64,000 nt of DNA, from the NCBI RefSeq assembly GCF_006345805.1, contig NC_042997.1:155372001-155436000 (forward strand), read 5' to 3'. The DNA comes from Octopus sinensis. Its lineage: Eukaryota. The position numbers and the translations under genes were made by a program. Under the pieces are notes generated by a model that was given only the letters and a program-made list of their open reading frames with translations, had not been told where the DNA came from and made no database searches. Below, in pieces: positions 5,597 to 63,250 of the stretch (the first letter of the stretch is position 1; each line of letters begins with the position of its first letter).

Positions 5597-6095
5597 AATT
5601 ATTGTATACAGTGCTCAGGTGCACCACAACTTGTCAAAAGTGCATATAAAGCATATGCAGTAATGTACAAATGTCTGGAAAGTGAACAGTGTATGAGTCA
5701 GATACATACTTGCGTGTGTATGGAGGGGAGAAAATCAGGTTTAGTGTTGACGAATCTCAGGAAGCATGGAAGTTTTGAAGGATGAAGTGCTCCGACAAAT
5801 AGCAACTGATGCCAGCAGTTTGTTCCATACTTCAGCAACTCTTAGCGGGAAAAAATGTTTCCGAAAGTCATGGGAGCTGTGCTGTTTTCTGACTTTGTAA
5901 ACATGTCCATGGGTGTTAGACAGGTGGAGTTTGAAAAAGTGCTCAGAGTTATTGTTAGTAAGATGGTTAATAATTTTATGGGTGTCTGCCAAGTCAGCTG
6001 CCAGATGTCGGAGTTTCAATGTATCCATGCCCAGGGAAGTAAGGCATTCAGAATATGGCAAATGCCTGATGGAGGGTATTCTCTTCGTTGCACAT
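5566..6095 (-). mobile_element. CR1/L2-type LINE 3' fragment with (ATT)n tail
   Basis: ORF 5741..6061 (PYSECLTSLGMDTLKLRHL...RKHFFPLRVAEVWNKL) is a typical CR1 ORF2 C-terminus. (AAT)n at 5566-5594. Confidence 0.85.
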
Positions 6096-14059: not shown

Positions 14060-14570
14060 ATCTCTATCTAGGTTGTCCCACAGCACGCCCCATGACTGTT
14101 TCCATACATTTTCCCCATTCATCTCGATCCTCCATAATGGTCCTCTGCTCCTGTACCCATTCCATACCAGCATCTTCCAGCAAGTTGTTAATATAGGTCA
14201 TCTTCCTCCTTCCTCTCCTGGTTCTTCCTTCCTTTGGTTGCCAGAGCACTAGGTTGTTAGCAATTTCATCAGTGTATCTGATGCAGTGTCAAGCTAGCCT
14301 CATATTTCTATGATGTATCTTCAATGCTATTTTTGGTAGTCTCTGGTATAAGTTGGCATTTGTTATATGACTCTTCCAGGAGACATTGAGTGCCATCTAA
14401 GTATCCTTGCATAACAACCATCCAACTGCTTCTTCAATGCTTTAGTGAGCATCCATGTTTCAGCCCCGTATAGAAGAACAGACTTCACTGTTGCCAGAAA
14501 TAACCTCACTTTCAATTTCCTTACTAACTTTGAACTCCATACCTTTCTCAATCCTAAGCATAATTATGTT
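14060..14570 (-). mobile_element. RTE/RTE-X-like LINE ORF2 C-terminal fragment
   Basis: ORFs 14363..14551 (KVRLFLATVKSVLLYGAETW) and 14064..14249 (LWQPKEGRTRRGRRKMTY...MEDRDEW). Confidence 0.85.
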
Positions 14571-17113: not shown

Positions 17114-17715
17114 TAGGGGTCATCCAATAAATAATGTGGTTTTTTCAATTACATGAACTAAAAGTTGGAGGAGGTCAGAATAAACTACCCACATCAACTT
17201 GCTATAAAAGCAGACAATAATTTTACCTTGTACTTGTTCTTAGTGCAAGTTTTGAAGAGTGCAGTTCGATTTTAACAGTTATTTTTCCAAAGCTATAAAG
17301 GAAATTACAAAGGAGCATATTAGGCATATTTTGCTTTATGAGTTCAATAAAGGCAACAACGCAATGGAAAGTGTGAGGAATATTAATGCAGTATATGGGG
17401 ATCGGACAGTAAGTGTAAGCCAGTGTCAACAGTGGTTCCAGAAATTCCAAGCTAGAAACTACAGTCCAGAAGACAAGCCTCGCCCTGGAAGATCTGTAGA
17501 GCTCAACGATGATGTCGTGCAAACCCTTGTGGAACAAAATCCCATCGTAACTGTTGAGGAACTACCAGAGAAGTTTGGATTTGGTCATTCACCCATTCAA
17601 CAACAACTGTGTGCCATCAGAAAAGTCTAATCGCATGCAGAGAGTGAATGTGTACTCCGCTTTGTTGTCACATCTCATGAATGAACTTTTTTAGACTGAA
17701 TAGTGACTGATGACA
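17114..17715 (+). mobile_element. 5' half of the same mariner family in a PECR intron
   Basis: Left TIR GGGGTCATCCAATAAATAATG. ORF 17259..17630 is homologous to 62130..62519 and breaks off at the IVTGD motif. Confidence 0.9.
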
Positions 17716-24407: not shown

Positions 24408-24802
24408 ATTATGGTTTCAAATTTTGGCACAAGGCTAGCAATTTGGGGAAGGGTGCAAATCAATTACATTGACCACAGTGCTCAACTGGTACTTATTTTA
24501 TTGACCCTGAAAGAATGAAAAGCAAAGTCAACCTTGGTGGAATTTGAACTCAGAATGTAAAGACAGATGAAATACCACTAAGCATTTTGCCTGGCATGCT
24601 AATTAATGGCTCTGCCAGCTTGCTGCCTTAATGATAATAATCATTTCTATTATAGGCACAGGGTCTGAAATTTTGGGGGAGAGGGATAGTTGATTACATC
24701 AACTGGTACTTATTTAATTAACCCTGAAAGGATGAATCAATCAACTTACCATACCCTTCAAATTTGCTGGCTTTGTATCAAAATTAGAAAGAATTATCAT
24801 TA

Positions 24803-24851
<49 letters not shown>

Positions 24852-25063
24852 GGCAGCAAGCTGGCAGAATTGTTAGCATGCCGGGCGAAATGTTTAGCAA
24901 CATTTCATCTGTCTTTACATTCTGAGTTCAAATTCCACCAAGATCAACTTTGCCTTTCATTCTTTTGGAGTCGATAAATTAAGTACCAGTGAAACACCGA
25001 GATCTATGTAATTGACTTGTCCCATCCCCCAAAATTTCAGGCCTTGTGCCTATTATAGAAAGG

Positions 25064-25131
<68 letters not shown>

Positions 25132-25359
25132 GGCAGCAAGCTGGCAGAATTGTTAGCATGCCGGGCGAAATGTTTAGCAACATTTCATCTGTCTTTACAT
25201 TCTGAGTTCAAATTCCACCAAGATCAACTTTGCCTTTCATTCTTTTGGAGTCGATAAATTAAGTACCAGTGAAACACCGAGATCTATGTAATTGACTTGT
25301 CCCATCCCCCAAAATTTCAGGCCTTGTGCCTATTATAGAAAGGATTATTATTATTATTA

Positions 25360-35334: not shown

Positions 35335-35485
35335 TCATGCTTCTTTCTCAGCGAGTTTTGTAAGTTCATGTATTTCTCTCCCCAACATTTTTGTGACATG
35401 CATTGCTTGTTTTACTTCATCACCGCCAATCTGTTGCAAGGCCACTTCTGCAGCTGTTCGAACATCGGCAATGACATCATTCCGC
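35335..35485 (-). CDS. TIR protein last exon (151 nt), (W)RNDVIADVRTAAEVALQQIGGDEVKQAMHVTKMLGREIHELTKLAEKEA*
   Basis: TTTTCAG acceptor, phase 2 fits, fourth HEAT motif, TGA stop. Total CDS 1293 nt = 430 aa plus stop. Confidence 0.92.
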
Positions 35486-36970: not shown

Positions 36971-37211
36971 CATAATTCTAATAGAGTTGGTACAGCTTTG
37001 TGTGCTTGTGAACGTCCAAGTGCCAAACATCCAGCTTCTCTCACTAAACGATCTTTGTCTTCGAGAACATCTATTAATGCTTGAATTGTTATATCATCAT
37101 TAGCACCAGTCTGGGCAAGACAAATGGCTGCAACAGTACGAACATTTGGTTCTTCATCGTTCGTTACTAAGTAGATTAAAGCATCAACAACTTCTCGGCT
37201 TTTGAATTTAC
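36971..37211 (-). CDS. TIR protein exon 8 (241 nt), HEAT/PBS repeats KFKSREVVDAL...DKDRLVREAGCLALGRSQAHKAVPTLLEL
   Basis: AAG acceptor and GTAACT donor. Repeated D..VR..A...L motifs; overlaps ORF 36967..37233. Confidence 0.93.
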
Positions 37212-38660: not shown

Positions 38661-38792
38661 TAAGATTTTCAATGGCTTCTACGCGGACATGAGAATTTAT
38701 GTTAAATACTTCTTTCATAGCATAACTTTCCCGTGCCTGCTCTTCTATCCTTTGCCACAAAGATGAAACTATTCCATCCACAGTGCAAAATT
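38661..38792 (-). CDS. TIR protein exon 7 (132 nt), (E)FCTVDGIVSSLWQRIEEQARESYAMKEVFNINSHVRVEAIENL
   Basis: CAG acceptor and GTAAGT donor, phases 1/1. The first HEAT motif begins here (NSHVRVEAI). Confidence 0.9.
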
Positions 38793-40023: not shown

Positions 40024-40163
40024 CAATAAATTTATCTCGTTTAAGACACCCATCACGAGTTATATGCATCTCCCACCGAAGGATAGATTTCAGCCAGTTT
40101 TGATCATCAGGAGTGTAAGCGCTAAACAAGCCTTGATAATCACAGGTCAAATCATACCAAAAT
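40024..40163 (-). CDS. TIR protein exon 6 (140 nt), FWYDLTCDYQGLFSAYTPDDQNWLKSILRWEMHITRDGCLKRDKFI
   Basis: CAG acceptor and GTGAGT donor, phases 2/1 consistent. Confidence 0.88.
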
Positions 40164-41744: not shown

Positions 41745-41868
41745 TGATTCCAATCTATTTGGTTTTCTGTATATTTTCTATCCCAATAATCAATAGGAGT
41801 TTCAAGGTTTTGTTTGTTGTAAATCTTAGTTGATCGCTGAGGTCTCTTCGATTCAGCATTCGACTTGT
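41745..41868 (-). CDS. TIR protein exon 5 (124 nt), KSNAESKRPQRSTKIYNKQNLETPIDYWDRKYTENQIDWN
   Basis: TAG acceptor after a pyrimidine tract and GTAAGT donor, phases 1/2 consistent. Confidence 0.88.
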
Positions 41869-43959: not shown

Positions 43960-44072
43960 TGTTAATGGAATTTAATACAGCTTTTATGTCCCTCAAAAGT
44001 TCGTTCATGGTTTCTGGATACCTCTCCTTATCAAGAAATTTATACCACTGCATACCTGCCAGCTTGAGTCTC
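43960..44072 (-). CDS. TIR protein exon 4 (113 nt), RLKLAGMQWYKFLDKERYPETMNELLRDIKAVLNSIN
   Basis: CAG acceptor and GTAAGT donor, phases 2/1 consistent. L...QW..F resembles TIR beta-E/alpha-E. Confidence 0.9.
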
Positions 44073-44729: not shown

Positions 44730-44875
44730 ATCCCAGTATCCATAGCCGAAAGGAGATTTTCATCTGAAGAAATGCTAACAGGGAAAATGCTTTTGTTTGA
44801 TATATATGCCAAGGACAATTCATCTTTACAGAATTTGGAATGAATGGAAGTTTCGCTGACAATAGATATGAACAC
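44730..44875 (-). CDS. TIR protein exon 3 (146 nt), VFISIVSETSIHSKFCKDELSLAYISNKSIFPVSISSDENLLSAMDTG(M)
   Basis: CAG acceptor and GTAAGT donor. TIR beta-C, alpha-C (SKFCKDEL) and beta-D (IFPV). Confidence 0.93.
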
Positions 44876-46644
44876 CTGTTATGAATAAAAAGATAGAAAA
44901 AATGTAAGAATAAATTTGATTACTAAAATATGGAAAAAAATTAACATTTAATAAGAATTCCTCATAATTATAAAATAATGAATTTCCTACATTGACCAGA
45001 GTGTTAAAAATTTATTGGAAAGCAGTGGTATTAAATAAATTAACCAAAGATATTTTATGGTATTTCTTCTTAGTATGGACTCTAGAGAGATAAACATTCA
45101 AAGTTGACACCAGCTGGATTTGAACTCAAAGTCAGATAAGTAAATACCACAATGCATTTTTTTATCCAGCACTCTAGCAATTTTGCACATCTGTTTTGAC
45201 AATACCTATATTTAACAGCTTTATATATTCTTCTACTTATTAAGATTTTGATGTCAGACAACCAAAAAATGTTTATGTAAAATGTGCAGTGTGTGTGTGT
45301 GTGTGTATGAAAGCTATGAGAGAATACATGGATTAAAAATATTAAGAAATGTAAATGAAGTTGAAGGTTTTGCAAAGATCAGACTATTTTTGTAATAGTG
45401 AAGCAGTAGCATCTGAGAAAACAAGTGATGTCCTGTGTTGGCAAATAATAAATGGAAAAAAATTAAGTGGTACAAGTTAGTACAAAGAAGAGATTTGGCA
45501 CTTCAGAAAGGAATCTTTATCAATGCCTCAGGTTTGGCATGGCTTCTACAGCTGGATGTAGAACAACCACTTTACAGAACACACAGGATGCATTATTTCA
45601 TGGCACCAGCACTAAAAAAATTGTCTTGCCCTTGGCAAAACTAAAATCCGTTTACAGCGTGTACTGGGTTTTTGTGCTGTTTTGTAGTAAGCACTTGTAA
45701 CCAGCAAGATAAAACTAACTAAAAGAGAACAGATTTGGTGCAAAGAGATCTGTTATGGTAGTGGGAAGAGTTAACAGAAGCGATACTTTTTAGTGGAAGA
45801 CTGGAAGAAGTAGTGTAAGGAGTTAGTGTGAAAGAGAGAGGATAAGTGGTGAGGAGGATGGGGCAAGTGAGTAAAGATGACCATATATACAAATACTTTA
45901 AACATTTTTATTTTCATTTTGAATGTGCTTTTTGATGCTGGAAAGATCTGATCTTGCGATATTGTTATTATTTCTCTCAGTGAATGCAGAAGCTTTGTTG
46001 AAAAAAGGTCAGCATTCATAAAGACAGAGATTTGACTCATATACTACTTGCAACATAATGGATGCTGCCTGAGGTACCAAGTGGCCAGGTGGTAGCACTG
46101 AATAGGCAACAAATTATGACGAACACCCAACAATCTATCCATGCAGTTTCCATCAAGTTAATGTCACCCACATGGTTTGAATAACCCAAGCTATGTTAGA
46201 AGATATCATAGCTCAAAATACTACTCGGTGAAATAACCAGGAACCACTTAATTGCAAAGCAAGTTTCATAACAACTCAGCTATGCTTGCACAAATTAATT
46301 CAGTAAATGTTTTTTCTTTAAGCTCAAATCTATATTCTTTACAACTGAATTTTATTGGACATTTTAATCCTTTTTTCGTGATAAGTAAATTAAGCAATAA
46401 ATGTTTTATAAAATTAAAAGAGAGTTGTGGTGGTGGAAAGCCTGAATAAAACTATATTAGTGTATACTCTGATGTTTATAATAACCTACTTTTCAAGTGA
46501 TATCATTTGCAACAGCTATACAAGCACTCAAACAATAACATAACTTGTAAAAGCAAGTTTACATACACACACACACACACAATTATATATCATTACGCAC
46601 AATAAACACAATATAATAAGGCGCTGAATACTAAATGCTGCAAA

Positions 46645-47505
46645 AGTAGAGTATGCATATGCATGAAAAGGAGTATGCATATGTAGAAAAATGAAGTATG
46701 CATATGCAGGAAAAGGAGTATGCATAAGCATGAAAAGGAGTATGCATATGCATGAAAAGGAGTATGCATATGCAGGAAAAGGAGTATGCATATACAGGAA
46801 AACAAAGTATGCATATGCAGGAAAAGGAGTATGCATATGCATGAAAAGGAGTATGCATATGCAGAAAAAGGAGTATGTATATGCAGGAAAAGGAGTATGC
46901 ATAAGCATGAAAAGGAGTATGCATATGCAGGAAAATGAAGTATGCATATGCAGGAAAAGCAGTATGCATATGCAGAAAAAGGAGTATGTATATGCAGGAA
47001 AAGGAGTATGCATAAGCATGAAAAGGAGTATGCATATGCAGAAAAAGGAGTATGTATATGCAGGAAAAGGAGTATGCATAAGCATGAAAAGGAGTATGCA
47101 TAAGCATGAAAAGGAGTATGTATATGCAGGAAAAGGAGTATGCATATGCAGGAAAACAAAGTATGCATAAGCAGGAAAAGGAGTATGCATATGCAGAAAA
47201 AGGAGTATGTATATGCAGGAAAAGGAGTATGCATAAGCATGAAAAGGAGTATGCATATGCATGAAAAGGAGTATGCATATGCATGAAAAGGAGTATGCAT
47301 ATGCATGAAAAGGAGTATGCATATGCATGAAAAGGGGTATGCATATGCATGAAAAGGAGTATGCATAAGCATGAAAAGGAGTATGCATAAGCATGAAAAG
47401 GAGTATGTATATGCAGGAAAAGGAGTATGCATATGCAGGAAAAGGAGTATGCATATACATGAAAAGGAGTATGCATATGCATAAAAAGGAGTGTGCATAT
47501 GCAGG
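46645..47505. repeat. 22-bp minisatellite (GCATATGCATGAAAAGGAGTAT)n, about 39 units
   Basis: Directly visible tandem array in intron 2 of the TIR gene; explains ORFs 46528-47696. Confidence 0.97.
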
Positions 47506-48326
47506 AGACTATATATGCATGTGTGTGTGTGGTAGTGCATATAAAAATAGGTGCCTGCACAGAGTATGTGCACACATGAAAGAGGTGTATGCTGGAATGT
47601 GTGAATGTGTATGTATGCAAGTGTGTGTGTGTGCGTGTGTGTATGCATGTGCATATTCATAGAAAAGAGAGCAGTACTAATTACATAGCTGTACATTTAA
47701 GTAATTTACTCTTATAAAAAATACTGTTACACTTCATAAACAACATTTTGTTAAATGAAATGACTGGCCAAAATAGCTACTGACCTTGAAATCAGTTGTC
47801 CTAAAAACCCATCCTTGAATGTTTACTTAGACAACTAACTACGTATGCAATAACAAAAATCATCTTTTTACACATTTTAAATTAAGAGAGGTCATTTGAA
47901 GCAAGAAATTTTAACTTTCATGTAGCTTCTGCACTGCCCTTAATGCTTCTTAAACTTTTCAGCAAATATTCTTTACTTTGTGTGTGTGTGTGTATAAATA
48001 CAAACACTCGAAATTATTCAAAAATAGTTAAAATTCCTTTGTAATAAATTCTGTTGCTTCCCTTCCCTGTCCTACAATTTCTAATCCCCACCCAGATTTT
48101 TTTTTTTTTTTTGCTGAAATAAAACAAAATATTAAAAACAATGAGAAAAAAACCTAAACACTTTCATCTGAATTGATATATGTTGTGCCAGTATATATAT
48201 ATATATTTTTCATGTCATTAACTATTCTCCAACAATAAGGTATGTTGAGAAAAATTCTCAAGAGAAATCAATATTATGAAACAAGATTTTCCAGCACAGG
48301 AAACAAATTAAAAGATATTTACTTAC

Positions 48327-48430
48327 TTTACTCTCAATGATAGCTTGTCCAATTTTTTTAAGGAAGTCAACACCAGCTCCTATATCAGCAGTGTCTACCC
48401 AAACACTAATGTTGTTCTTTTCCAGAGTAT
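48327..48430 (-). CDS. TIR protein exon 2 (104 nt), (D)TLEKNNISVWVDTADIGAGVDFLKKIGQAIIESK
   Basis: TAG acceptor and GTAAGT donor. Matches the TIR_2 beta-B/BB-loop/alpha-B pattern VWxDxxDIxxGxxFxxxIxxAIxxS. Confidence 0.92.
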
Positions 48431-57543: not shown

Positions 57544-57685
57544 CTTTTAAGTATAGCATAAAATCCTTGTTGCTATGGCTGTAACTTATCATTAAATCAC
57601 GGCTGACTGGACGTATTGTAATTGGAGGGTGTTGAGATTTTTCTTTTCTGTACACAGGAGGACAACGGGATATTTTATGTCCCAT
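57544..57685 (-). CDS. TIR/EF-hand-like/HEAT protein exon 1 (142 nt), MGHKISRCPPVYRKEKSQHPPITIRPVSRDLMISYSHSNKDFMLYLK
   Basis: ATG directly follows a TTTTTATTTAG acceptor whose TAG is an in-frame stop. DLMISYSH is TIR beta-A. GTTAGT donor, phase 1. Confidence 0.85.
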
Positions 57686-61988: not shown

Positions 61989-63250
61989 CTGGGTCATCCC
62001 ATAAATAATGCGTTTTTTTTTTTTTAATTGCATGAACTAAAAGTCAGGGGTGGGGATAAACTACCCGCATCAACTTGCTATAGAAGCAGGCAGTTACTTT
62101 GTCCTTATTCTTGGTGCAAATTTTGAAGAGTGCAGTTCGATTTTAACAGTTATTTTTTCAAAGCTATAATGGAAGTGACAAAGAGCATATTCGGCGTTTT
62201 GTTTTATGAGTTCAATAAAGGCAACAGCACAACGGGAAGTGCGAGGAATATTAACGCTGTGTATGGGGATCGGACAATAAGCGTAAACCAGTGTCAAAGG
62301 TGGTTCCAGAAATTCCGAGCCGGAAACAACAGCCTAGAAAACGAGCCACGTCCTGAAAGATCTGTAGAGCTCGGCGAGCTCCTGCAAACCCTGCTGGAAC
62401 AAAATCCCATCGAAACTGTTGATGAACTAGCAGAGAAGCTTGTATTTGGTCATTCAACTATTCATCGACACCTGCGTGCCATTCGAAAAATCAGCAAATT
62501 GGATCAATGGATTCCTTAAACTTGCCGAATCTATTCGCACGGAGAGAGTGAATGTGTGCTCTTCTTTGCTCTCTTACGTCTCGCGAATGAACCTTTTTTT
62601 GAACCGAATAGTGACTGGTGATGAGAAATGGGTCTCTATAAAATGTCAAGTGCCGAAGACAATGGGTAGGGAAAGGAGAAACACCGGCACCCTAGGCTAA
62701 AGAAGGCCTTCACCCACGTAAGGTGTTGTTATCTGTTTGGTAGAATATGAAAGGTTTAATCCACTTTGAAATTTTAAACCCAAACCAAACGATAACACGG
62801 GAGATCTACTGCGAGTAGCTTGAGCGGCTTAAGTCTGCGCTAGAAGAAAAACAACCAACTTTACTTTCAAGACGAAAGGTGTTCTATCAGGACAACGCAC
62901 GGCCACATACAGCGAGGATGACATTCCAAAGGCTGGAGCAGTTTGATGGAAAACGATGCCCCACCCACCATAATCGCCGGACATTGACCCATCTGATTAC
63001 TATTTATTCCGCAATCTTCAAAATCATTTGGGCGGAAAAAATATGAATTTTGTAAACGAGGTCAGAATAGTTCTAGAGGAGTGTTTTTCGTTACGGACAA
63101 GCGAATTTTGGAAGAGGGGCCTTGCAAGTCTACCAGATAGATGAAAGGGCATTGAAGAAAATGGAAGGAGAGTATATTTTAGATTAAAAAAAAAAAGAAC
63201 TTTGTTTATTTTAATTTTGAAAAATAAAAGAAGTATATGGGATGACCCAA
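61989..63250 (+). mobile_element. Full-length (1262 bp) mariner DD34D transposon with inactivated transposase
   Basis: TIRs CTGGGTCATCCCATA / TATGGGATGACCCAA with TA on both sides. HTH ORF 62130..62519, IVTGDEKWV, FYQDNARPHTA and PP*SPDIDPSDYYLF (YSPDLAPSD with Tyr changed to stop), plus frameshifts. Confidence 0.95.

What the first reader, a model, noticed from the sequence alone, without database searches (positions are those of the whole stretch)
44730..48430. TIR domain keeps the catalytic-position glutamate (E101), so it may be an NAD+-cleaving enzyme
Seen: alpha-C reads SKFCKDEL and the BB loop reads DIGAGVDF, lacking the Pro of the TLR/MyD88 PG motif. Established: SARM1, plant and bacterial TIR_2 enzymes need this alpha-C Glu to cleave NAD+ or make cADPR isomers, whereas scaffold TLR TIRs act through the BB-loop Pro. 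Inference: enzymatic rather than purely adaptor function.
Basis: partly seen in the sequence, partly recalled or inferred. Interest (0 to 1): 0.7.

Follow-up and report, generated by a model that had tools for sequence, protein, structure and literature searches.

The report
Octopus TIR-HEAT gene, likely cADPR-making enzyme

Summary
Observation confirmed. Both motifs lie on the minus strand in consecutive exons: DIGAGVDF at 48363-48386 and SKFCKDEL at 44816-44839. They belong to a 9-exon gene (57685 to 35335). Its 430-aa product is identical to RefSeq XP_029636231.1, "uncharacterized protein LOC115211707 isoform X2" of Octopus vulgaris/sinensis.

The protein has an N-terminal TIR_2 domain (aa ~29-170), an EF-hand-like helical module (~193-285) and PBS-type HEAT repeats (~290-430).

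E101 aligns with SARM1 E642, AbTIR E208, BdTIR E127 and TLR4 E750. It is Glu in 63 of 65 family members from molluscs to amphioxus.

A 2026 bioRxiv preprint (Hurieva et al.) already lists this octopus protein. Its Glu (108 in isoform X1) lies 0.41 A from the validated ThsB catalytic Glu. The preprint marks the TIR domain of the Branchiostoma lanceolatum orthologue as active, making canonical cADPR in E. coli. That domain is 53% identical to the octopus TIR, without gaps, and its E183 matches E101.

The enzymatic reading is therefore supported, more likely as a cADPR cyclase than as an NAD+ depleter. The Glu alone is a weak predictor: only 12 of 61 Glu-bearing animal TIRs were active, and TLR2 was not. 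The octopus enzyme itself is untested. Interest is modest.

The parts
57544..57685 (-). Coding exon 1 (aa 1-47 plus 1 nt). It starts ATG GGA (MGHKISRC...) directly after an AG acceptor and contains TIR strand A, DLMISYSH.
   Evidence: The AG acceptor in front of the ATG fits isoform X1, which adds a 7-aa leader (MRFGKLR) from an exon outside the window.
48327..48430 (-). Coding exon 2 (aa 48-82): helix A end, strand B (SVWVD), BB loop DIGAGVDF (48363-48386) and helix B.
44876..48326 (-). Intron 2 (3.45 kb). It contains a 22-bp minisatellite of ~39 copies at 46649-47506.
   Evidence: The minisatellite explains the spurious 310-367-aa ORFs.
44730..44875 (-). Coding exon 3 (aa 83-130): strand C, helix C SKFCKDEL (44816-44839), E101 codon GAA at 44819-44821, and strand D.
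43960..44072 (-). Coding exon 4 (aa 131-168): strand E and helix E, the C-terminal end of the TIR domain.
   Evidence: Pfam TIR_2 extends to aa 156.
41745..41868 (-). Coding exon 5 (aa 169-209): disordered linker and the start of the EF-hand-like module.
   Evidence: Found only after comparison with P0001. pLDDT is below 50 for residues 181-186.
40024..40163 (-). Coding exon 6 (aa 210-256): EF-hand-like helical module.
38661..38792 (-). Coding exon 7 (aa 257-300): end of the middle module and the first HEAT repeat.
36971..37211 (-). Coding exon 8 (aa 301-380): HEAT repeats.
   Evidence: Pfam HEAT_2 E = 1e-18, plus HEAT and HEAT_PBS. Foldseek matches alphaRep HEAT-like proteins.
35335..35485 (-). 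Coding exon 9 (aa 381-430 plus TGA stop): last HEAT repeat and the C-terminal helix.

Best explanation
The window carries the octopus gene LOC115211707. It has 9 coding exons over 22 kb on the minus strand. It encodes a 430-aa cytoplasmic protein built as an N-terminal TIR_2 domain, an EF-hand-like helical module and PBS-type HEAT repeats.

The TIR domain is most likely a working NAD+-processing enzyme with E101 on helix C as the catalytic residue. By analogy with its lancelet orthologue, it most likely cyclises NAD+ to canonical cADPR, a Ca2+-mobilising messenger, rather than draining NAD+.

Shown here: the gene model and its identity to RefSeq; the TIR fold; equivalence of E101 to validated catalytic glutamates; near-invariance of E101 and of the surrounding S-K-[YF]-C-x-D-E-L motif across bilaterian orthologues; and, from the literature, activity of one orthologous TIR.

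Inferred: that the octopus domain is itself active; that activity needs TIR self-association through the flexible Gly-rich BB loop, as in SARM1, plant and bacterial TIRs; that the C-terminal EF-like and HEAT modules hold the TIR in check or sense the trigger; and that the MG N-terminus of the short isoform may tether the protein to membranes.
For: The gene model has canonical AG/GT at all junctions and consistent phases. Its product is identical to XP_029636231.1.

Pfam gives TIR_2 at 3.6e-20 and HEAT_2 at 1e-18. The AlphaFold2 model has mean pLDDT 85 with the TIR core above 90. Its best solved TIR neighbours are enzymatic TIRs: human SARM1 (TM 0.72-0.76), RPS4, RPP1 and SPARTA. The best sequence hits in the PDB are all NADase-type TIRs, namely Cat1 (2.5e-6), AbTIR, RPS4, L6 and RPV1, with no TLR or MyD88.

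E101 shares a column with SARM1 E642, AbTIR E208, BdTIR E127 and TLR4 E750. An aromatic residue sits four positions upstream: F97, Tyr in 56 of 65 relatives, matching AbTIR W204 and BdTIR Y123. E101 is Glu in 63 of 65 relatives.

Preprint 10.64898/2026.04.20.719644, Table S2, lists octopus A0A6P7SDV1 with GLU 108 at 0.41 A from ThsB E85, in the same >=40%-identity TIR cluster as the lancelet protein. Table S4 entry 139 is B. lanceolatum TIR 111-246 with catalytic residue 183, scored active with cADPR. That construct equals P0033 at 100% identity and is 53% identical to the octopus TIR without gaps.
Against: No assay exists for the octopus protein. The supporting experiment is a preprint that over-expressed an isolated domain in E. 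coli. The signal was seen only in the 4-hour lysate, and no NAD+ depletion or Thoeris-reporter activation is recorded for that entry.

The catalytic-position Glu alone is a weak predictor. Only 12 of 61 Glu-bearing animal TIRs were active, and TLR2 (E716) was inactive. In some TIRs the Glu side chain points away from the pocket, and I could not inspect side-chain geometry here.

The octopus protein differs from the lancelet protein at 47% of TIR positions, including F97 for Tyr and D63/I64 for Gly/Leu in the BB loop. The regulatory roles proposed for the HEAT and EF-like modules and for the N-terminus rest only on analogy.
Confidence: 0.65

Rival explanations
1. Scaffold or adaptor only. The TIR domain acts by TIR-TIR contacts in Toll-like or other immune signalling, perhaps at membranes like myristoylated TRAM. 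The conserved Glu would be structural or vestigial.
For: Invertebrate 'ecTIR-DC' proteins have been proposed as adaptors or regulators (PMC6321704). Many family members start with an N-myristoylation-type MGxxx[ST]. HEAT repeats are protein-binding modules. Most Glu-bearing animal TIRs, TLR2 included, gave no product in the screen.
Against: The orthologous lancelet TIR is catalytically active. The whole helix-C motif and strand-A DxMISYSH are nearly invariant over more than 500 My of bilaterian divergence. There is no BB-loop Pro, death domain, LRR or transmembrane segment. The nearest sequence and structure relatives are enzymatic TIRs. Scaffold and enzyme roles are not mutually exclusive.
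Confidence: 0.15
2. SARM1-like executioner. Once activated, the TIR domain drains NAD+ to ADPR and nicotinamide and kills or disables the cell. The HEAT module would play the autoinhibitory role of the SARM1 ARM domain.
For: SARM1 TIR is the best solved structural match among TIR domains. The BB loop (G-A-G-V-D-F) resembles SARM1's E-A-G-K-F. The pairing of a helical-repeat module with a TIR recalls ARM plus TIR. A few animal TIRs in the screen did deplete NAD+.
Against: The lancelet orthologue has no NAD+ depletion recorded. There are no SAM domains to build an octamer, and the domain order is reversed. No SARM1 ARM-domain chain appears among the 50 best Foldseek matches listed.
Confidence: 0.15
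3. The TIR is an enzyme with a different main product or substrate that the published screen did not measure, for example linear or other ADPR-derived signals, base-exchange products, or 2',3'-cNMP from nucleic acids as in some plant TIRs. cADPR would then be a side product.
For: The preprint states that several known TIR products were not measured and that isolated domains may behave atypically. The cADPR signal of the orthologue needed 4 hours of induction.
Against: There is no positive evidence. cADPR is the only product observed for the family.
Confidence: 0.05

Closest known systems
Branchiostoma lanceolatum A0A8J9VAE2 (mislabelled 'FAM65A'; P0033), a TIR / EF-hand / HEAT (TPR-clan) protein tested in Hurieva et al. 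2026 (bioRxiv 10.64898/2026.04.20.719644)
   Same: It is an orthologue with the same domain order. The TIR domains are 53% identical and 73% similar without gaps, and the S-K-[YF]-C-K-D-E-L and GAGVDF motifs match. Its E183 corresponds to E101. The preprint places both proteins in the same >=40% TIR cluster.
   Different: The lancelet protein has a ~80-aa longer N-terminal region. Its middle domain is annotated as an EF-hand, while the octopus loop lacks Ca2+ ligands. Only the lancelet TIR has been assayed.
SARM1 (human / Drosophila dSarm), an ARM-SAM-SAM-TIR NADase
   Same: Both have a TIR fold (Foldseek TM ~0.72-0.76). The catalytic Glu matches (E642 and E101), as does the strand-A Tyr (Y568 and Y35). 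Both have a Gly-containing BB loop and a helical-repeat module in the same chain.
   Different: Here the TIR is N-terminal, not C-terminal. There are no SAM domains. The repeats are PBS-type HEAT, not ARM. TIR identity is only ~20%. SARM1 depletes NAD+, whereas the orthologue of this protein made cADPR with no depletion recorded. This protein is not a SARM1 orthologue.
Bacterial and plant catalytic TIR_2 domains (Cat1, AbTIR, ThsB, BdTIR, RPS4, L6)
   Same: These are the best sequence matches among solved structures: Cat1 at E = 2.5e-6 with SDWCWDEL aligned to SKFCKDEL, then AbTIR, RPS4 and L6. The Pfam TIR_2 model fits far better than the TLR-type TIR model (73 against 34 bits).
   Different: The partner domains differ (CARF, NB-LRR, or none). 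Their products are 2'cADPR, 3'cADPR or NAD+ depletion rather than canonical cADPR.
TLR / MyD88 / TRAM-type adaptor TIRs
   Same: Same fold. TLR2 and TLR4 also keep the helix-C Glu (E716, E750). An N-terminal Met-Gly is reminiscent of myristoylated TRAM; this comparison is from my own knowledge and was not tested.
   Different: This protein has no BB-loop Pro (A66). It has no LRR, transmembrane or death domains. No TLR or MyD88 chain appears among the PDB sequence hits up to E = 10.

Membership tests
Catalytic (NAD+-processing) TIR domains | TIR (flavodoxin-like) fold | tested here: met
   Pfam TIR_2 scores 3.6e-20 over aa 32-156. The AlphaFold2 model shows a beta-alpha pattern with TIR-core pLDDT above 90. 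Foldseek matches SARM1, RPS4, RPP1, SPARTA and Hydra TRR-2 TIRs.
Catalytic (NAD+-processing) TIR domains | Glutamate on helix C at the position of SARM1 E642, AbTIR E208 and ThsB E85 | tested here: met
   The MAFFT column is shared with E642, E919, E208, E127 and E750, and HMMER alignments to Cat1 and AbTIR agree. The preprint's TM-align gives 0.41 A to ThsB E85 for the octopus protein. Side-chain orientation was not examined.
Catalytic (NAD+-processing) TIR domains | The Glu is conserved among orthologues | tested here: met
   63 of 65 members have Glu. One is a gap in a truncated model, and one is Arg in the most divergent member, P0067.
Catalytic (NAD+-processing) TIR domains | Aromatic residue four positions before the Glu (SARM1 W638, AbTIR W204) | tested here: met
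   The octopus residue is F97. Across the family it is Tyr in 56, Phe in 6 and Thr in 2. It aligns with AbTIR W204, BdTIR Y123 and TLR4 W746. Its role in the pocket is taken from established knowledge of SARM1 and AbTIR.
Catalytic (NAD+-processing) TIR domains | Glu-dependent NAD+ turnover or cADPR-isomer production | not testable with these tools
   The octopus protein has not been assayed. The lancelet orthologue's TIR is scored active for cADPR in Table S4, entry 139.
Catalytic (NAD+-processing) TIR domains | Self-association that forms a composite active site through the BB loop | not testable with these tools
   Only a monomer model was made. The BB loop (61-70) is Gly-rich and of low confidence (pLDDT ~63), which is consistent with mobility.
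SARM1 orthologues | ARM - SAM - SAM - C-terminal TIR architecture | tested here: not met
   The TIR is N-terminal. No SAM domain was found. The repeats are HEAT / HEAT_PBS.
TLR / IL-1R / MyD88-type signalling TIRs | BB-loop Pro (xPG) with LRR/TM, Ig/TM or death-domain partners | tested here: not met
   Position 66 is Ala (Ala in 58 of 65 members, Pro in 3). No such partner domains were found. No TLR or MyD88 chains appear in the PDB sequence search up to E = 10.
Bilaterian TIR / EF-hand-like / HEAT family (TIR cluster with representative A0A2G8L436 in Hurieva et al. 2026) | Same domain order, with at least 40% TIR identity to cluster members | tested here: met
   All 65 relatives match TIR_2 and HEAT_2. 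Whole-protein identity to them is 29-83%, and TIR identity to the lancelet member is 53%. The octopus entry A0A6P7SDV1 is listed in that cluster. Isoform X1 (437 aa) equals the window protein plus 7 residues.
Canonical Ca2+-binding EF-hand proteins | A 12-residue loop with Asp/Asn/Glu ligands at positions 1, 3, 5 and 12 | tested here: not met
   There is no Pfam EF-hand hit. Only the EF-hand-like Cbl_N2 model matches, in 9 of 65 members. The octopus loop H-I-T-R-D-G-C-L-K-R-D-K lacks the ligands.
N-myristoylated proteins | N-terminal M-G-{EDRKHPFYW}-x-x-[STAGCN]-{P} | tested here: inconclusive
   31 of 65 family members fit the pattern, and 8 more fit it behind a short leader. Octopus MGHKISR has His at position 3, which is off-pattern, and isoform X1 buries the Gly.

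The most novel reading that the evidence does not exclude
This family is an ancient bilaterian, CD38-independent source of the Ca2+-mobilising messenger cADPR. The family is present in molluscs, annelids, nemerteans, bryozoans, brachiopods, echinoderms, hemichordates, amphioxus, tunicates and acoels, and it was not seen in vertebrates, arthropods, nematodes or cnidarians. On this reading, a TIR-type ADP-ribosyl cyclase has its output gated by the attached EF-hand-like and HEAT modules. Its membrane attachment would be switched by alternative first exons that expose or bury an N-myristoylation Gly (octopus X2 MGHKIS... against X1 MRFGKLR-MGHKIS...).
Probability: 0.2. Interest if true: 0.55.

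Novelty: already known. Interest (0 to 1): 0.3.

Why it matters
Until recently SARM1 was regarded as the only enzymatic TIR protein of animals. This gene belongs to a conserved invertebrate family whose TIR domain now has first experimental support for making cADPR. If the octopus protein behaves like its lancelet orthologue, it would be a TIR-based route to a classical Ca2+ messenger, in animals where cADPR biology was first described (sea urchin, Aplysia).

The family also offers a compact three-module protein for studying how flanking domains gate TIR catalysis.

For the genome scan, the practical message is this: the call was correct, the gene is annotated but uncharacterised, and the specific insight is already in a 2026 preprint.

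Tried and rejected
1. Bacterial-style ORF listing of the span gave only spurious 97-367-aa ORFs. These are created by a 22-bp minisatellite and by microsatellites. I rejected them, because the gene is spliced.

2. A word-indexed homologue search with the 83-aa exon 2+3 peptide found nothing. The full draft protein was needed.

Comparison with P0001 corrected it to 9 exons and 430 aa.

5. I searched for the alternative leader exon (MRFGKLR) of isoform X1. It is not in the window.

6. A canonical EF-hand in the middle domain is not supported.

7. SARM1 orthology is rejected on architecture.

8. The 'ecTIR-DC' nomenclature of Gerdol et al. 2017 could not be checked, because that paper is not in the library. 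Only citing papers were found. A search for the amphioxus bbtTIRA / bbtTIRC adaptors found only a review, which I did not follow up.

9. Rfam and tRNA scans of the window found nothing.

10. I did not use the exhaustive representative-protein search, the second structure job or the contig look-ups. They would not have changed the verdict.
Full report
WHAT IS IN THE SEQUENCE

The window is animal DNA, about 35% G+C, full of microsatellites and interspersed repeats. The two quoted motifs exist, both on the minus strand. DIGAGVDF is at 48363-48386 and SKFCKDEL is at 44816-44839. They lie in different reading frames, so they belong to two exons. Both exons have clean splice signals. The limits of the finding, 44730 and 48430, are exactly the end of one exon and the start of the other. 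The 3.45-kb intron between them contains a 22-bp minisatellite of about 39 copies (46649-47506). That repeat produces the long but meaningless ORFs in a bacterial-style ORF list.

GENE MODEL

I assembled the gene from splice sites and reading-frame phase. It was about 50 residues shorter than the best database relative, and comparison with that relative revealed one missed exon and a better acceptor site.

The final model has 9 coding exons on the minus strand: 57685-57544, 48430-48327, 44875-44730, 44072-43960, 41868-41745, 40163-40024, 38792-38661, 37211-36971 and 35485-35335. All junctions have AG/GT and consistent phases. The model encodes 430 residues.

The product is identical, residue for residue, to XP_029636231.1, "uncharacterized protein LOC115211707 isoform X2", of Octopus vulgaris/sinensis. 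A second isoform, X1 (437 aa), adds the leader MRFGKLR in front of MGHKIS. Its exon is not in the window. The AG acceptor that directly precedes the ATG of exon 1 fits this isoform. E101 of isoform X2 is therefore E108 of isoform X1.

THE PROTEIN

Pfam finds TIR_2 at aa 32-156 (E = 3.6e-20). The TLR-type TIR model scores much lower (4e-8). Pfam also finds HEAT_2, HEAT and HEAT_PBS repeats at about aa 290-400.

An AlphaFold2 model built on 65 relatives is confident, with mean pLDDT 85 and pTM 0.69. It shows:
- a TIR domain at 31-170;
- a disordered linker;
- a helical module with two short strands at 193-285;
- HEAT repeats at 293-429.

Helix C spans residues 96-107, so E101 sits on it. The BB loop (61-67) has low confidence, as expected for a mobile loop.

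The middle module is annotated as an EF-hand in several orthologues by the preprint discussed below. Here it gets only a Cbl_N2 (EF-hand-like) match, in 9 of 65 relatives. The octopus loop lacks the usual Ca2+ ligands.

IS E101 THE CATALYTIC-POSITION GLUTAMATE?

Yes, by four independent routes.

1. An alignment of the family with reference TIR domains puts E101 in the same column as SARM1 E642, dSarm E919, AbTIR E208, BdTIR E127, TLR4 E750 and TLR2 E716. The reference sequences and catalytic residue numbers come from Table S4 of the preprint. In every case the aligned residue is the tabulated catalytic residue.

2. HMMER alignments to solved structures put SKFCKDEL on SDWCWDEL of the CRISPR-associated TIR Cat1, and on KDWTNYE of AbTIR.

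3. Foldseek finds human SARM1 TIR (TM 0.72-0.76), RPS4, RPP1 and SPARTA TIRs as the best solved TIR matches.

4. The preprint's own structural alignment lists Octopus vulgaris A0A6P7SDV1 (TIR 36-171) with "GLU 108" at 0.41 A from the validated catalytic E85 of ThsB. Their cut-off is 3 A.

An aromatic residue lies four positions upstream, as in AbTIR (W204) and BdTIR (Y123). It is F97 in octopus and Tyr in 56 of 65 relatives.

CONSERVATION AND DISTRIBUTION

The search returned 74 hits at E <= 0.001. Sixty-eight are animal relatives from molluscs, annelids, a nemertean, bryozoans, hemichordates, amphioxus, tunicates and acoels; most carry both TIR and HEAT domains. The other six (P0069-P0074) are weak HEAT-only matches (E 6.5e-14 to 4.4e-4), one of which is named as bacterial and the others unnamed. 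The preprint's cluster adds brachiopods and echinoderms. No vertebrate, arthropod, nematode or cnidarian appears. The word-indexed search could miss very distant members.

In an alignment of 65 members, E101 is Glu in 63. One exception is a gap in a truncated model, and the other is Arg in the most divergent sequence. The surrounding S-K-[YF]-C-x-D-E-L-x-L-A-Y and the strand-A D-x-M-I-S-Y-S-H are nearly invariant.

EXPERIMENTAL EVIDENCE FROM THE LITERATURE

Hurieva et al. (bioRxiv, April 2026, 10.64898/2026.04.20.719644) expressed 154 eukaryotic TIR domains in E. coli and looked for cADPR isomers by LC-MS.

Entry 139 of their Table S4 is Branchiostoma lanceolatum A0A8J9VAE2: a 525-aa protein, TIR 111-246, catalytic residue 183. 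It is scored active and produces cADPR in the 4-hour lysate. [quoted passage not shown]

That construct is 100% identical to residues 111-246 of my hit P0033. It is 53% identical and 73% similar to octopus residues 29-162 without a gap, with E183 opposite E101.

Among the lancelet entries in the part of Table S4 that I read (entries 138-155), it is the only one scored for cADPR. It is therefore most likely the "lancelet" of their Figure 3. For Figure 3 the text states that mutating the glutamate abolished cADPR production in all cases.

HOW STRONG IS THE INFERENCE?

The glutamate alone is weak evidence. Only 12 of 61 Glu-bearing animal TIRs were active in that screen. TLR2 (E716) was inactive, while TLR4 (E750), which also has the BB-loop Pro, was reported active.

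The screen also misses true enzymes: RUN1, RPS4 and RPP1 scored negative.

What lifts the probability here is the active orthologue in the same TIR cluster, the deep conservation of the whole motif, and the closeness to enzymatic rather than TLR-type TIRs. I put about 0.65 on the octopus TIR being a Glu-dependent NAD+-processing enzyme, most likely a cADPR-forming cyclase.

The main rivals are:
- a pure adaptor role (0.15);
- a SARM1-like NAD+-draining executioner (0.15);
- another main product that the screen did not measure (0.05).

REGULATION (INFERENCE ONLY)

Known catalytic TIRs need self-association, and the preprint notes that flanking domains may autoinhibit. The HEAT module matches generic PBS-type HEAT scaffolds (alphaRep, 28-36% identity). 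No SARM1 ARM-domain chain appears among the 50 best Foldseek matches listed.

About half of the family starts with an N-myristoylation-type MGxxx[STAGCN]. Eight more members carry a short leader in front of such a motif, which suggests that alternative first exons expose or bury the Gly. The octopus MGHKIS is off-pattern at position 3, so this point is uncertain for octopus.

COMPARISON WITH KNOWN FAMILIES

This protein is a member of the bilaterian TIR / EF-hand-like / HEAT family that the preprint clusters around A0A2G8L436. It probably works like other catalytic TIR domains.

It is not a SARM1 orthologue: it has no SAM domains, the domain order is reversed, and TIR identity is about 20%. 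It is not a TLR/MyD88-type TIR either: it has no BB-loop Pro and no LRR, transmembrane or death domains.

NOVELTY AND VERDICT

However, the gene is annotated, although uncharacterised. The catalytic-position Glu of this very protein is tabulated in a public preprint, and an orthologue has been assayed. I therefore rate the finding as already known, with modest interest (0.3).

Open questions remain: activity of the octopus protein itself, its physiological trigger, the role of the EF-like and HEAT modules, the isoform switch, and whether TIR-made cADPR feeds Ca2+ signalling in these animals.

Noticed in passing
window 46649-47506 (intron 2 of the TIR gene): A 22-bp minisatellite (consensus GAGTATGCATATGCAGGAAAAG) in ~39 copies with 90% matches. 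It generates open frames of 310-367 aa on the minus strand that are not genes.
   Followed up: yes
window 17259-17630 (+) and 62130-62519 (+): Two ORF fragments with the Mos1/mariner transposase N-terminal HTH_48 domain (E = 5e-21 and 2.8e-17). They are 85% identical over 181 nt and are probably decayed mariner-type elements.
   Followed up: partly
window ~7.4k, 15.2k, 17.9k, 29.8k, 32.7k, 49.5k and 55.6k (repeat families D3, D5, D8), plus D9/D10 and many inverted pairs: Several SINE-like interspersed repeat families of 150-280 nt occur in both orientations, including inside introns 1 and 2 of the TIR gene. None has an Rfam or tRNA match.
   Followed up: partly
window 24793-25352: A 280-nt unit is duplicated head to tail at 100% identity, flanked by long poly-Asn/Ile-coding AAT/ATT-type simple repeats.
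   Followed up: no
window ~14067-14563 (-) and 5741-6094 (-): Short ORF fragments that resemble the C-terminal tails of non-LTR retrotransposons. One matches DUF6451 (E = 1.4e-7) and the others have no Pfam match.
   Followed up: partly
window 57685 (start codon of exon 1) and upstream, beyond 64000: The ATG of isoform X2 directly follows an AG acceptor. Isoform X1 splices a 7-aa leader (MRFGKLR) onto it from an exon outside the window. The short form exposes Met-Gly and the long form buries it. The same 'short leader + MG...' arrangement appears in Argonauta, Haliotis, Patella, Tegillarca, Lineus and Watersipora proteins.
   Followed up: partly
protein aa 193-285 (exons 5-7, window 41868-38661): The middle module folds like an EF-hand pair and is annotated as EF_hand in many orthologues by the preprint. 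The octopus loop H-I-T-R-D-G-C-L-K-R-D-K lacks the Ca2+ ligands, and Pfam gives only an EF-hand-like Cbl_N2 match in 9 of 65 relatives.
   Followed up: partly
database relative P0033/P0034: The Branchiostoma lanceolatum orthologue is named 'FAM65A' in NCBI and UniProt, and a Phallusia orthologue is named 'G patch domain-containing protein 3'. Both names look like annotation errors for a TIR-HEAT protein.
   Followed up: no
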